The notes beneath the pieces are model-generated. The model was not told where the DNA came from and did not search any database. It worked only from the letters and a program-made list of their open reading frames with translations. Source: Octopus bimaculoides (taxonomy: Eukaryota). Taken from it: DNA of 44,782 nucleotides. Position numbers and translations under genes: made by a program. The stretch lies in the NCBI RefSeq assembly GCF_001194135.2, contig NC_068981.1, positions 193,870,165-193,914,946 on the forward strand, read 5' to 3'. Shown here piece after piece: positions 18,363 through 20,198 of the stretch; position 1 is the first letter of the stretch; each line of letters starts with the position of its first letter.

Positions 18363-18463
18363 TCAAGAATGTTCTGAATAAGGTGGAGGGTCATCTTTTG
18401 GTAGCATAGTAAGCATTGAAAGATCTTCAAATGTGGGTCCGTAAACCTCGTCTGCAGGTGGCG
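18363..18463 (-). CDS. Coding exon 5 (last) of CUB-like type I membrane protein: cytoplasmic tail with PPPY
   Basis: Acceptor ttttttgttttacAG at 18465-18464, phase 1. Reads (A)PPADEVYGPTFEDLSMLTMLPKDDPPPYSEHS*, stop TGA at 18365-18363. Too short for the ORF track. Confidence 0.85.
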
Positions 18464-19994
18464 CTGTAAAACAAAAAAGTTATATGTAATTAGTGCAATT
18501 ATCTTAGCAGTGACATATATTTAATTCTATTATTTGTTTCAGTTGTTTGACTGCGGCCATGCTGGAGCATTATCATTTAGTCAAAGAAATCAATCCCAGG
18601 ACTTATTCTTTGTGAGCCTGGTACTTATTCTTTCGGTCCCTTGCACCGAATTGCTAAGTTATGGGGATGTAAACACACCAACACTGGTTGTCAAGTGATG
18701 ATGGGGGGACAGCCCATGGGTGTCACGCAGTGGGACTGAGCCTGGAACCTTATGGTTGGGAAGCAAGCTTCTTACCACACAGCCACACCTACATCGTTAA
18801 TTAACTGTTACATGTATTTAGTGTAATTAACAAACAGACAGTTCTTCATCATCACCATCATCATTATCATCAGGGTTCCTGACAATTAGCTCGAAAGACT
18901 TCCAGAAGTTGGCTGGCAGATCTTTTATGCTTTATGTATTTTCCTTGTGTCAGTAATTACACTGTGGCCATGCTGGGGCATTACGTTAAGAATTTTTAGT
19001 TGAATGAATCAACCCCAGTACTTGTTCTATCAGTCTCTTTTGTCAAACTGCTAAGTTATGGGGATGTAAACAGACCAATACCCATCACTGTCAAGCAGTG
19101 ATGGGGGAAAACACAAAAAGAAGGACACACAATCATATATATATATATATACACGATGGGCTTCTTTCAGTTTCCACCTATGAAATCTATTGATAAGGCT
19201 TTGGTCAGCTAGAGGCTATAGTAGAAAACGCTGGCTCAAGGTGCCATGCAGTGATATAGAACCCAGAACCATGAGGTTCGTAAGTCAATTTCTTACCCCA
19301 CCCCCACACCTGTGTCTTTTACTAGATTCTTTTTCATTCTCAAAATTTATTGAAACAAAACAGCATAATTCAACAGAAATATGGTAATAGAATGGTTAAG
19401 CACAGCTAAACATCAGTACTGAAACAATAAGTTATATTAGTCTATTAATGAGCTGTGTTAACGAGAGATGGCTGAAATTACAACCAAAGTGGATGTAGAT
19501 GTCAATTAAATCATCATCATTGTTTAACGTCCGTTTTCCATGCTGGCATGGGTTGGACAGTTTGACTGAAGATGGCAAGCCAGGAGGCTGCACCAAGTTC
19601 CAATCTGATCTGGTAAGGTTTCTACAGCTGGATGCCCTTCCTAACGCCAACCACTCCGAGAGTGTAGTGAGTGCTTTTATGTGTCACTGGCATGGGATCC
19701 AGCTGGGCGGCACTAGCATCAGCCACGTTCAGATGGTGCTTTTTCATTATAAATATTGTTTTCAAATTCAGGCACAAGGCCAGCAATATTAGGGGACAGG
19801 GTAACTCAATCACACTGACCCCAGTGCTCATCTGGTACTTATTCTTTCGACCCTGAAAGGATAAAAAGCAAAGGGATCCTTGGCGGAATTTGAACTCAGA
19901 ACACGAAGACAAACTAAATTCCACTTATCATGCTAACGATCCTGCCAGCTCATTACCCTAAATCATTATAAGCATGAATTGTAATGAAACTTAC

Positions 19995-20198
19995 CTGAAG
20001 GTCTAATTTGTGTATGGTTGGTCGGTTGTGCGGGAAGGACTGTGCCGTTAACAGTTCTTTTCTCTTTGGAACATTTAGAGCAATAACATACAGCAATTAC
20101 GATCGTGATGATTATAATTATTATAACGACTATTGTTATAATGATGGTTTTCATCGGGCCATCTGAAACGACATCTGTTTTCCTTAGTTGGATAACAT
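19995..20198 (-). CDS. Coding exon 4: TM helix and proximal cytoplasmic tail
   Basis: Acceptor ttatttttctctAG (20200-20199), donor CAG|GTAAGT (19994-19989), 204 nt, phase 1-1. Reads (D)VIQLRKTDVVSDGPMKTIIITIVVIIIIIITIVIAVCYCSKCSKEKRTVNGTVLPAQPTNHTQIRPS. Confidence 0.9.

What the first reader, a model, noticed from the sequence alone, without database searches (positions are those of the whole stretch)
18363..20040. Dual ESCRT 'late-domain' tail: PSAP made only by splicing, plus PPPY
Seen: exon 4 ends ...IRPS-G and exon 5 begins CG-CCA-CCT, so the junction creates P216-S-A-P219. PPPY lies at residues 243-246. If intron 4 is retained, the protein instead ends PSGKFHYNSCL* (stop at 19968-19966) and loses both motifs. 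Established: P(S/T)AP binds the TSG101 UEV domain and PPxY binds NEDD4-family WW domains, and the pair is used by ARRDC1 and by viral budding proteins. Inference: this receptor may recruit its own ubiquitination and ESCRT sorting (lysosomal turnover or loading into extracellular vesicles), with splicing as an on/off switch.
Basis: partly seen in the sequence, partly recalled or inferred. Interest (0 to 1): 0.7.

Follow-up and report, generated by a model that had tools for sequence, protein, structure and literature searches.

The report
Mollusc CUB receptor with PSAPP/PPPY tail
The last two exons of an uncharacterised octopus membrane-protein gene join to spell two short docking motifs (PSAPP and PPPY) that stay unchanged in octopuses, limpets, scallops and clams, so the protein very probably recruits the cell's ubiquitin-ligase and ESCRT sorting machinery; nothing suggests that splicing works as an on/off switch.

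Summary
PSAP is residues 216-219, with the Ala codon split G|CG across intron 4. PPPY is residues 243-246. The retained-intron stop is at 19968-19966. The model is identical to RefSeq Octopus bimaculoides LOC106869895, an "uncharacterized protein".

The protein has a signal peptide, one CUB domain, a transmembrane helix, a cysteine-rich juxtamembrane stretch and a disordered tail. Orthologues at about 25% identity occur in cephalopods, gastropods and bivalves. In 17 of 17 of them P-S-A-P-P is invariant, and it is the only five-residue invariant block in the protein. One to three PPxY motifs follow it.

Intron 4 splits the Ala codon at the same nucleotide in Octopus, Patella, Argopecten and Solemya. 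The other three introns are conserved too, so the "made by splicing" feature is ancestral gene structure and not a device.

The reading "tail recruits NEDD4-type ligases and TSG101/ESCRT-I" is therefore well supported in silico, though no binding was tested. The splicing-switch idea has no support: the splice sites are consensus-strength, the introns are long and variable, no annotated isoform retains the intron, and the retained peptide is not conserved.

This is a new, mollusc-wide member of a known class of membrane proteins (CYYR1/NDFIP, ARRDC1, SCAMP3, TMEM55B).

The parts
29166..29256 (-). Exon 1 (coding part): ATG at 29256-29254, signal peptide MAKANFFHEIFLLLFFLCIPVS..., ends in phase 1
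   Evidence: identical to RefSeq protein P0009; AF2 N-terminal helix 4-18
27002..27228 (-). Exon 2: N-terminal two thirds of the CUB domain (residues 31-106; C38, C68, C80, C92)
   Evidence: invariant C38, C68, F72, C80 in the family alignment
24912..25041 (-). Exon 3: C-terminal third of the CUB domain (residues 107-150; C111, C120, Y140, F142)
   Evidence: found by splice and phase scan; AF2 beta-sandwich 28-148 with Foldseek top hits all CUB domains
19995..20198 (-). Exon 4: stalk, transmembrane helix, CYCSKCSKEKR juxtamembrane stretch, and tail up to P216-S217 plus the first base (G) of Ala218. In-frame alternative acceptors put the first exon base at 20174 (isoform X2) or 20162 (isoform X3).
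20086..20148 (-). Transmembrane segment core (about residues 167-187, TIIITIVVIIIIIITIVIAVC)
   Evidence: hydropathy window; AF2 continuous helix 149-192
18464..19994 (-). Intron 4 (1531 nt, phase 1). Donor CAG|GTAAGT, acceptor tttttgttttacag|C. Filled with SINE-like repeats. 89-92% identical to the O. sinensis intron.
19966..19968 (-). TAA stop that would end the protein as ...PSGKFHYNSCL if intron 4 were retained
   Evidence: not conserved as a peptide in O. sinensis
19995..20001 (-). 5' half of the PSAPP motif: CCT (P216), TCA (S217), G (first base of A218)
   Evidence: same split in Patella, Argopecten, Solemya and O. sinensis
18456..18463 (-). 3' half of the PSAPP motif: CG (rest of A218), CCA (P219), CCT (P220)
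   Evidence: P216-P220 are invariant columns in the alignment
18363..18463 (-). Exon 5 coding part: APPADEVYGPTFEDLSMLTMLPKDDPPPYSEHS plus stop TGA (18365-18363)
18378..18389 (-). PPPY motif (residues 243-246; CCT CCA CCT TAT), four residues from the C-terminus
   Evidence: P244 and Y246 are invariant columns

Best explanation
The region holds the last two coding exons of Octopus bimaculoides LOC106869895. This gene encodes a 250-aa type I membrane protein: signal peptide, a single divergent CUB ectodomain, one transmembrane helix, a cysteine- and lysine-rich juxtamembrane stretch, and a disordered cytosolic tail of about 60 residues.

Shown here: the protein belongs to a family found, as far as these databases show, only in molluscs. 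The most conserved element of that family is the tail pentapeptide P-S-A-P-P, followed by one to three PPxY motifs.

Inferred mechanism:
1. The PPxY motif docks WW domains of a NEDD4-family HECT ligase.
2. The ligase ubiquitinates the juxtamembrane lysines of this protein and/or a partner held by the CUB domain.
3. PSAPP docks the UEV domain of TSG101 (ESCRT-I).
4. The protein, with whatever its CUB domain holds, is then sorted into multivesicular-body vesicles for lysosomal turnover. Budding in vesicles is a less likely outcome.

The motif straddles an exon junction only because an ancestral phase-1 intron sits inside the Ala codon. Splicing of this intron is most likely constitutive.
For: Gene model and junction: identical to RefSeq P0009. 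O. sinensis has the same structure.

Family: HMMER against 1.84 billion representatives gave 16 hits. Every hit that carries a species name is a mollusc: Patella, Arion, Littorina, Elysia, Solemya, Ostrea, Mactra, Argopecten/Pecten, Potamilus, Sinanodonta.

Conservation: the invariant columns are C38, C68, F72, C80, C120, Y140, F142, S161, C187, P216, S217, A218, P219, P220, P244 and Y246. PSAPP lies 29-36 residues after the membrane in 17 of 17 orthologues, and PPxY is present in 17 of 17. Synonymous codon differences occur at P216, A218, P219 and P220.

Spliced mRNA contigs carry the motif in Argopecten (L003) and in a second, unnamed species that is the closest non-Octopus relative (L004).

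Fold: the AF2 ectodomain has block-mean pLDDT of about 74-91 over residues 31-150. Foldseek top hits are spermadhesin, PCPE-1, Kremen, MASP, Neto2 and neuropilin CUB domains (TM-score 0.78 on 1spp_B). Pfam CUB is hit by 3 of 17 orthologues, best E = 3.2e-8.

Tail resemblance to known PY adaptors: sub-threshold Pfam hits to CYYR1 (8 of 17), yeast RCR (3 of 17) and WBP-1.

Precedents: CYYR1 PPxY binds WWP1/WWP2/ITCH at late endosomes (PMC11399591). TMEM55B uses PPxY for NEDD4-like ligases and PSAP for ESCRT (PMC10761734). ARRDC1 PSAP binds TSG101 UEV (PMC9105457). SCAMP3 carries PPAY and PSAP (PMC8950476). Arenavirus Z proteins carry PSAPPY or PTAP plus PPPY (PMC7561441).
Against: No binding, localisation or expression data exist for this protein or any family member. 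The function rests on two short linear motifs.

The Octopus protein has a single PPxY, whereas CYYR1 needed pairs of PPxY for strong WWP1 binding (PMC11399591).

PSAPP is also a PxxP sequence and could serve another proline-recognition domain.

Octopus TSG101 and NEDD4-family genes were not examined here; their presence is assumed from general knowledge of Metazoa.

Oyster paralogues of the family lack PSAPP, so the motif is not obligatory for every CUB-TM protein of this type.

The invariant Ser codon TCA plus G also matches the exonic splice-donor consensus CAG|GT, so part of the conservation at S217 and the first base of A218 could be a splicing constraint.
Confidence: 0.6

Rival explanations
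1. Splicing switch. Regulated retention of intron 4 produces a tail-less receptor ending PSGKFHYNSCL, which escapes ubiquitination and ESCRT sorting. The intron would then work as an on/off control for both motifs.
For: Retention would remove both motifs at once. Because intron 4 is the last intron, a stop inside it should not trigger nonsense-mediated decay (general knowledge). The intron has sat inside the motif in four mollusc lineages.
Against: The donor CAG|GTAAGT and the pyrimidine-rich acceptor are consensus-strength. The intron is long and its length varies from 397 to 3195 nt. All four introns are equally conserved in position and phase. No annotated isoform lacks the junction: the variants differ only in first exons or in the exon-4 acceptor. 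Both assembled mRNA contigs are spliced. The retention peptide differs at 4 of 9 residues between O. bimaculoides and O. sinensis, and that stretch is no more conserved than the rest of the intron.
Confidence: 0.06
2. The tail is a PY adaptor, but PSAPP is read by a different proline-recognition module, such as an SH3 domain (PxxP) or a WW or EVH1-type domain recognising APPL/PPLP. The protein would then signal or scaffold and would not enter the ESCRT pathway.
For: PSAP is formally a PxxP motif. Most orthologues continue as PSAPPL, and some as PSAPPLP. No UEV binding was tested.
Against: Ser and Ala are as invariant as the prolines in 17 of 17 sequences. A P(S/T)AP ligand requires this; a generic PxxP ligand, which tolerates the x positions, does not (general knowledge of SH3 ligands). 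No conserved Arg or Lys sits at SH3 class I or II positions: the residue before the motif is R, M, Q, E or V, and the residue after PP is A, M, L, I or F. Co-occurrence with PPxY is the classic late-domain pairing (PMC7561441, PMC10761734).
Confidence: 0.15
3. The protein works mainly as a regulator or activator of NEDD4-family ligases, like NDFIP or CYYR1, or as an ARRDC1-like driver of outward vesicle budding. On this view it is not itself a cargo receptor destined for lysosomes.
For: The tail gives sub-threshold matches to CYYR1, yeast RCR and WBP-1 profiles. CYYR1 drives WWP1 autoubiquitination and lysosomal loss (PMC11399591). ARRDC1 with PSAP plus PPxY buds microvesicles (PMC9105457).
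Against: Unlike CYYR1 and NDFIP, this family has a well-conserved ligand-binding-type ectodomain (CUB). That argues for capturing an extracellular or cis partner. No data distinguish the destinations.
Confidence: 0.2
4. The motifs are chance products of a proline-rich tail and have no function.
For: Short proline motifs are common in disordered tails. PPxY alone appears in 6.4% of shuffles.
Against: Both motifs together appear in 0.055% of shuffles. PSAPP is the only five-residue invariant block across three mollusc classes. Synonymous codon variation shows selection on the protein.
Confidence: 0.02

Closest known systems
CYYR1 and the STMC6 group (WBP1, WBP1L, VOPP1, Shisa): single-pass proteins whose PPxY tails bind NEDD4-family ligases
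   Same: Small type I protein with a transmembrane helix followed by a Cys-rich juxtamembrane stretch and a short proline-rich tail ending in PPPY. The Pfam CYYR1 profile aligns to the transmembrane helix plus tail (residues 158-247) at E = 1.7e-5 to 2.6e-6. CYYR1 uses its PPxY motifs to bind WWP1, WWP2 and ITCH at late endosomes (PMC11399591).
   Different: The score is below Pfam's gathering threshold (25.7-28.4 bits against 31). The ectodomain is a roughly 120-residue CUB fold, not the short Cys/Tyr-rich module. The CYYR1 paper mentions no PSAP motif (0 occurrences). Here PSAPP is the most conserved element. Octopus has one PPxY; CYYR1 has three.
TMEM55B (PIP4P1)
   Same: A cellular membrane protein that combines a PPxY motif (recruits NEDD4-like ligases) with a PSAP motif (recruits ESCRT) (PMC10761734).
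   Different: TMEM55B is a lysosomal protein with a different topology and domain content, and no CUB ectodomain. No sequence relationship was detected.
ARRDC1 (ARMM budding), SCAMP3 and LITAF/SIMPLE
   Same: Host proteins carrying both P(S/T)AP and PPxY, which bind TSG101 and NEDD4-family ligases respectively (ARRDC1: PMC9105457; SCAMP3 PPAY and PSAP: PMC8950476; LITAF from my own knowledge).
   Different: ARRDC1 is a soluble arrestin-fold adaptor. SCAMP3 is a four-pass protein. LITAF is a monotopic zinc-ribbon protein. None has an extracellular ligand-binding domain.
Viral late domains (Lassa Z PTAP plus PPPY, Pichinde Z PSAPPY, Ebola VP40 PTAPPEY, HIV-1 p6 PTAPP)
   Same: The same peptide pair, including the extra proline (P-S/T-A-P-P). 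In Mactra the two motifs are only 3 residues apart (PSAPPLEDPPAY), much like the compact viral arrangements (PMC7561441).
   Different: This is a cellular gene with conserved introns in four mollusc lineages, and there is no viral context. Spacing between the motifs varies from 3 to about 40 residues.
Single-pass CUB-domain membrane proteins (Kremen, Neto1/2, neuropilins)
   Same: The predicted ectodomain matches these CUB domains structurally. Kremen and Neto act as partner-binding auxiliary or clearance receptors (general knowledge).
   Different: Those proteins have additional domains (kringle/WSC, LDLa, FV/VIII, MAM) and different tails. None is known to me to carry an invariant PSAPP plus PPxY pair.

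Membership tests
CYYR1 (Pfam PF10873) | Whole-protein score at or above the Pfam gathering threshold (31 bits) | tested here: not met
   25.7 bits for the full protein and 28.4 bits for the transmembrane helix plus tail. 8 of 17 orthologues hit at E<0.01, best 1.1e-5.
CYYR1 (Pfam PF10873) | Short N-terminal cysteine/tyrosine-rich extracellular region (profile positions 1-48) | tested here: not met
   The match covers only profile positions 49-128. The ectodomain folds as CUB.
STMC6 / Shisa-like single-pass proteins | Compact N-terminal domain with six conserved cysteines, followed by a transmembrane helix and a PY-rich tail | tested here: not met
   The mature ectodomain has six cysteines, but they are spread over about 85 residues of a CUB beta-sandwich. 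No Shisa hit was obtained, and WBP-1 was hit by only 1 of 17 members at E = 0.0098. The tail part (TM plus PPxY) is met.
CUB domain (Pfam PF00431) | CUB beta-sandwich fold with conserved disulfide-forming cysteines | tested here: met
   The Pfam CUB profile does not hit the Octopus sequence itself, but it hits 3 of 17 orthologues, best E = 3.2e-8. In the AF2 model, Foldseek's 43 PDB hits at E<=1e-3 are CUB-containing proteins, and the TM-score is 0.78 to spermadhesin 1spp_B. C38, C68, C80 and C120 are invariant.
CUB domain (Pfam PF00431) | Ca2+-binding acidic/Tyr site used by many ligand-binding CUB domains | not tested
   Residue-level superposition was not done.
P(S/T)AP late-domain-type ligands of TSG101 UEV | P-[ST]-A-P core in a disordered, cytosol-exposed segment | tested here: met
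   PSAP is at residues 216-219. The tail has pLDDT<50, indicating disorder. The motif lies 29-36 residues after the transmembrane helix, on the side opposite the signal-peptide-led CUB domain. PSAPP is invariant in 17 of 17 orthologues.
P(S/T)AP late-domain-type ligands of TSG101 UEV | Direct binding to the TSG101 UEV domain, with ESCRT-dependent sorting lost on mutation | not testable with these tools
   Needs pull-down, ITC and cell assays.
PPxY (PY) ligands of NEDD4-family WW domains | P-P-x-Y in a cytosolic disordered segment | tested here: met
   PPPY is at residues 243-246. P244 and Y246 are invariant, and there are 1-3 copies in all 17 orthologues.
PPxY (PY) ligands of NEDD4-family WW domains | Binding to WW domains and ligase-dependent ubiquitination | not testable with these tools
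   Needs biochemical assays. Candidate acceptor lysines K192, K195, K197, K199 and K240 are present.
Regulated intron-retention switch | Weak splice sites, a short intron, annotated or assembled retained isoforms, and a conserved retained reading frame | tested here: not met
   Consensus-strength splice sites. Intron length 397-3195 nt. No retained isoform is annotated. The retained peptide is not conserved. Read-level RNA-seq was not available.

The most novel reading that the evidence does not exclude
A family found only in molluscs so far, made of single-CUB receptors that carry their own viral-style late-domain pair. Each receptor would act as a self-contained sorting device: it captures an extracellular or cis-membrane partner through the CUB domain, then uses PPxY with a NEDD4-type ligase and PSAPP with TSG101 either to clear that partner into multivesicular bodies or to export it on ESCRT-budded vesicles. 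This would be a receptor-level analogue of ARRDC1 microvesicles or of Commissureless/Kremen-type clearance, and one not described outside vertebrate and insect models.
Probability: 0.2. Interest if true: 0.6.

Novelty: new member of a known kind. Interest (0 to 1): 0.4.

Why it matters
The analysis gives a testable function to a gene family that is annotated only as "uncharacterized" or "CUB domain-containing" in at least 14 mollusc species. An invariant PSAPP held across cephalopods, gastropods and bivalves, three classes that diverged deep in mollusc history, is unusually strong evidence for a short linear motif. It suggests that the TSG101-UEV/P(S/T)AP and WW/PPxY interactions are used together by an endogenous receptor in lophotrochozoans. 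These animals have almost no experimental ESCRT biology. The result also shows that a motif made only by splicing can simply reflect an old intron position, which is a useful caution for scans of this type.

Tried and rejected
1. The first homologue search, using only the transmembrane helix plus tail, found nothing. The word-indexed search evidently could not seed on the low-complexity helix. Searching with the ectodomain succeeded.
2. An attractive open frame at 22213-22114 (minus strand) was rejected as exon 3, because its phases (2 in, 2 out) cannot join exon 2 (ends in phase 0) to exon 4 (starts in phase 1). The scan constrained by phase and splice-site strength then found 25041-24912.
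4. Pfam on exon 2 alone, and on the Octopus ectodomain alone, gave no CUB hit. CUB status had to come from orthologues and the predicted fold.
5. The PDB sequence search gave only transmembrane-helix noise.
6. The megablast against phage records was pointless for this eukaryotic window and found nothing.
7. The profile search with alignment A2 returned mainly oyster paralogues and no non-mollusc relatives.
8. Genomic look-ups for Ostrea P0016 and Littorina P0015 returned no record.
9. A literature search for the locus names found no paper on this gene.
10. I also looked for ALIX-type YPx(n)L and acidic dileucine motifs in the tail. None is present or conserved.
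Full report
**What the window is.** The sequence is a draft eukaryotic assembly with 11 runs of N (4190 bases), abundant microsatellites and SINE-like repeats. The finding lies on the minus strand.

**Checking the observation.**
- Reading 18000-20400 on the minus strand shows an exon ending ...ATT AGA CCT TCA G|gtaagt at 19995. A downstream exon begins ttttacag|CG CCA CCT at 18463 and runs to a TGA at 18365-18363.
A scan for exons with the required phases and good splice sites gave exon 3 at 25041-24912. 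It also gave a signal-peptide first exon at 29256-29166. Exon 2 at 27228-27002 was read directly.
- The five exons total 753 nt and have phases 0/1/0/1/1. They give a 250-aa product in which PSAP is residues 216-219, with Ala218 encoded G|CG across the junction.
- PPPY is residues 243-246, and read-through of intron 4 ends PSGKFHYNSCL at a TAA at 19968-19966.
- The product is identical to RefSeq XP_052829736.1 / XP_014771306.1, "uncharacterized protein LOC106869895" of Octopus bimaculoides (P0009).
- Two further RefSeq isoforms (242 and 238 aa) use in-frame acceptors with first exon bases at 20174 and 20162. All isoforms share the exon 4-5 junction.
- In shuffles of the 64-residue tail, P[ST]AP occurs in 1.3%, PPxY in 6.4% and both in 0.055%.

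**What the protein is.**
- Pfam on the Octopus protein gives only a sub-threshold CYYR1 match covering the transmembrane helix and tail (25.7-28.4 bits against a cut-off of 31).
- An exhaustive HMMER search of 1.84 billion representatives with the window's isoform X2 found 16 proteins at E<1e-3.
- Every hit that carries a name is a mollusc: Patella caerulea/vulgata, Arion vulgaris, Littorina saxatilis, Elysia marginata, Solemya velum, Ostrea edulis, Mactra antiquata, Argopecten/Pecten/Ylistrum, Potamilus, Sinanodonta and Saccostrea. All are annotated "uncharacterized" or "CUB domain-containing".
- Three of 17 aligned members hit Pfam CUB, best E = 3.2e-8.
- An AlphaFold2 model built on the family alignment has a confident beta-sandwich at residues 28-148, a long helix at 149-192 and a disordered tail.
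- Its best PDB matches are all CUB domains: spermadhesins, PCPE-1, Kremen, MASP, Neto2 and neuropilins. The TM-score is 0.78 to 1spp_B.
- The architecture is therefore signal peptide, one CUB domain, transmembrane helix, Cys-rich juxtamembrane stretch (CCCCK in most species, CYCSKCSK in Octopus) and a disordered tail.

**Conservation of the motifs.**
- The alignment has 17 orthologues with 22-26% identity to Octopus outside the cephalopods. The invariant columns are C38, C68, F72, C80, C120, Y140, F142, S161, C187, P216, S217, A218, P219, P220, P244 and Y246.
- P-S-A-P-P is the only run of five invariant residues in the whole protein, and it sits in a tail that is otherwise unalignable.
- It lies 29-36 residues after the membrane in 17 of 17 sequences. 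One to three PPxY motifs follow in 17 of 17.
- Codons for P216, A218, P219 and P220 differ synonymously between Octopus, Patella, Argopecten and a further, unnamed species that is the closest non-Octopus relative. Selection therefore acts on the peptide. Only the Ser codon TCA is fixed, and it also fits the CAG|GT donor consensus.
- A paralogous oyster subfamily lacks PSAPP, but most of its members keep a PPxY.

**The intron.**
- Spliced mapping of the orthologous proteins onto genomic loci shows the same five-exon structure in Patella caerulea (L001), Argopecten irradians (L002), Solemya velum (L006) and O. sinensis (L005). Phases are 0/1/0/1/1 and exon lengths are nearly identical.
- Intron 4 always splits the Ala codon at the same nucleotide: TCA G|gtaag ... 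ag|CN CCN CCN.
- All four introns are conserved in this way, so the position of intron 4 inside the motif is ancestral gene structure and not a special device.
- Intron 4 has a perfect donor and a strong acceptor. Its length varies from 397 to 3195 nt.
- It is no more conserved at its 5' end than elsewhere between the two Octopus species (89-92% identity). The would-be retention peptide differs between them (GKFHYNSCL versus GKFPHISYL).
- No annotated isoform in any species lacks the junction. Two assembled mRNA contigs (L003, L004) are spliced.
- Read-level RNA-seq could not be examined here.

**How it most likely works.**
- Shown: the gene model, the motifs, their conservation, the CUB fold and the type I layout.
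- Inferred from established motif biology: PPxY binds WW domains of NEDD4-family ligases and P(S/T)AP binds the TSG101 UEV domain.
- The pair occurs in host proteins that engage both machineries: ARRDC1 (PMC9105457), SCAMP3 (PMC8950476) and TMEM55B (PMC10761734).
- The pair also occurs in viral matrix proteins, including the exact PSAPP form in arenavirus Z (PMC7561441).
- CYYR1, the profile that the tail weakly resembles, recruits WWP1, WWP2 and ITCH to late endosomes through its PPxY motifs (PMC11399591).
- I therefore propose the following sequence. The CUB domain holds a ligand or cis partner, and the PPxY motif recruits a HECT ligase. The ligase ubiquitinates the juxtamembrane lysines or the partner. 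PSAPP then hands the complex to ESCRT-I for sorting into multivesicular bodies.
- Whether the end point is lysosomal turnover, vesicle export or ligase regulation cannot be decided from sequence.

**Comparison and novelty.**
- The protein is not a CYYR1 or STMC6 member. It scores below the Pfam threshold and its ectodomain is different.
- It is a genuine, though divergent, CUB-domain protein.
- The combination of one CUB domain with an invariant PSAPP and a PPxY tail was not found in the literature searched.
- Mechanistically it belongs to a known class, so I rate it a new member of a known kind with moderate interest.

Noticed in passing
window 20162-20198 (minus strand): Exon 4 has three in-frame tandem acceptors, with first exon bases at 20198, 20174 and 20162. 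Each recreates an Asp codon (x|AT). They correspond to RefSeq isoforms X1, X2 and X3 (250, 242 and 238 aa), which differ by VIQLRKTD and VVSD in the extracellular stalk. The same three isoforms are annotated in O. sinensis and O. vulgaris.
   Followed up: partly
L002 (Argopecten irradians) 4165-7149, intron 4: The intron holds a 31-bp minisatellite of about 74 copies, plus a 145-bp repeat. Each unit carries a copy of the exon-4 end and its 5' splice site (CAACCATCAG|GTAAG). The splice donor inside the PSAPP codons has therefore been tandemly amplified dozens of times.
   Followed up: partly
window 14-403 (minus strand): Fragment of a Mos1/mariner-type transposase N-terminus (Pfam HTH_48, E = 1.5e-8, above threshold).
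   Followed up: partly
window 35849-36283 (plus strand): 145-codon open frame with C2H2 zinc-finger matches, flanked by assembly gaps. Whether it belongs to a gene or to a repeat is unknown.
   Followed up: no
window 20932-21588 (plus strand), 27652-28095 (minus strand) and 28732-29013 (minus strand): Inverted copies of one repeat-borne open frame (…DIVLIEKENK.C.I.DIACPA.NKVCDKEERKVERYDRLAWEVKQLWSMKKV…) lie in introns 3 and 1 of the gene. There is no Pfam match. It is probably a transposable-element remnant.
   Followed up: partly
window 23746-24789 (intron 3): 34-bp tandem repeat of about 27 copies, with a higher-order 102/314-bp periodicity.
   Followed up: no
window 25167-25975: An assembly gap (N run) ends only 126 bp upstream of exon 3. 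Ten other N runs are present, 4190 N in total. The gene model is nevertheless complete and matches RefSeq.
   Followed up: yes
proteins P0024, P0025, P0042-P0048 (Ostrea, Saccostrea): Oysters have a paralogous CUB-TM subfamily without PSAPP. Several members share other conserved tail motifs (SEIPHTRL, EYTVTVPV(V/I)VNT) and mostly keep one PPxY.
   Followed up: no
protein P0022 (Sinanodonta woodiana, 560 aa): This model contains two CUB-TM-tail units in tandem. The first tail has LSAPPP in place of PSAPP. It may be a fused gene model of two neighbouring paralogues.
   Followed up: no
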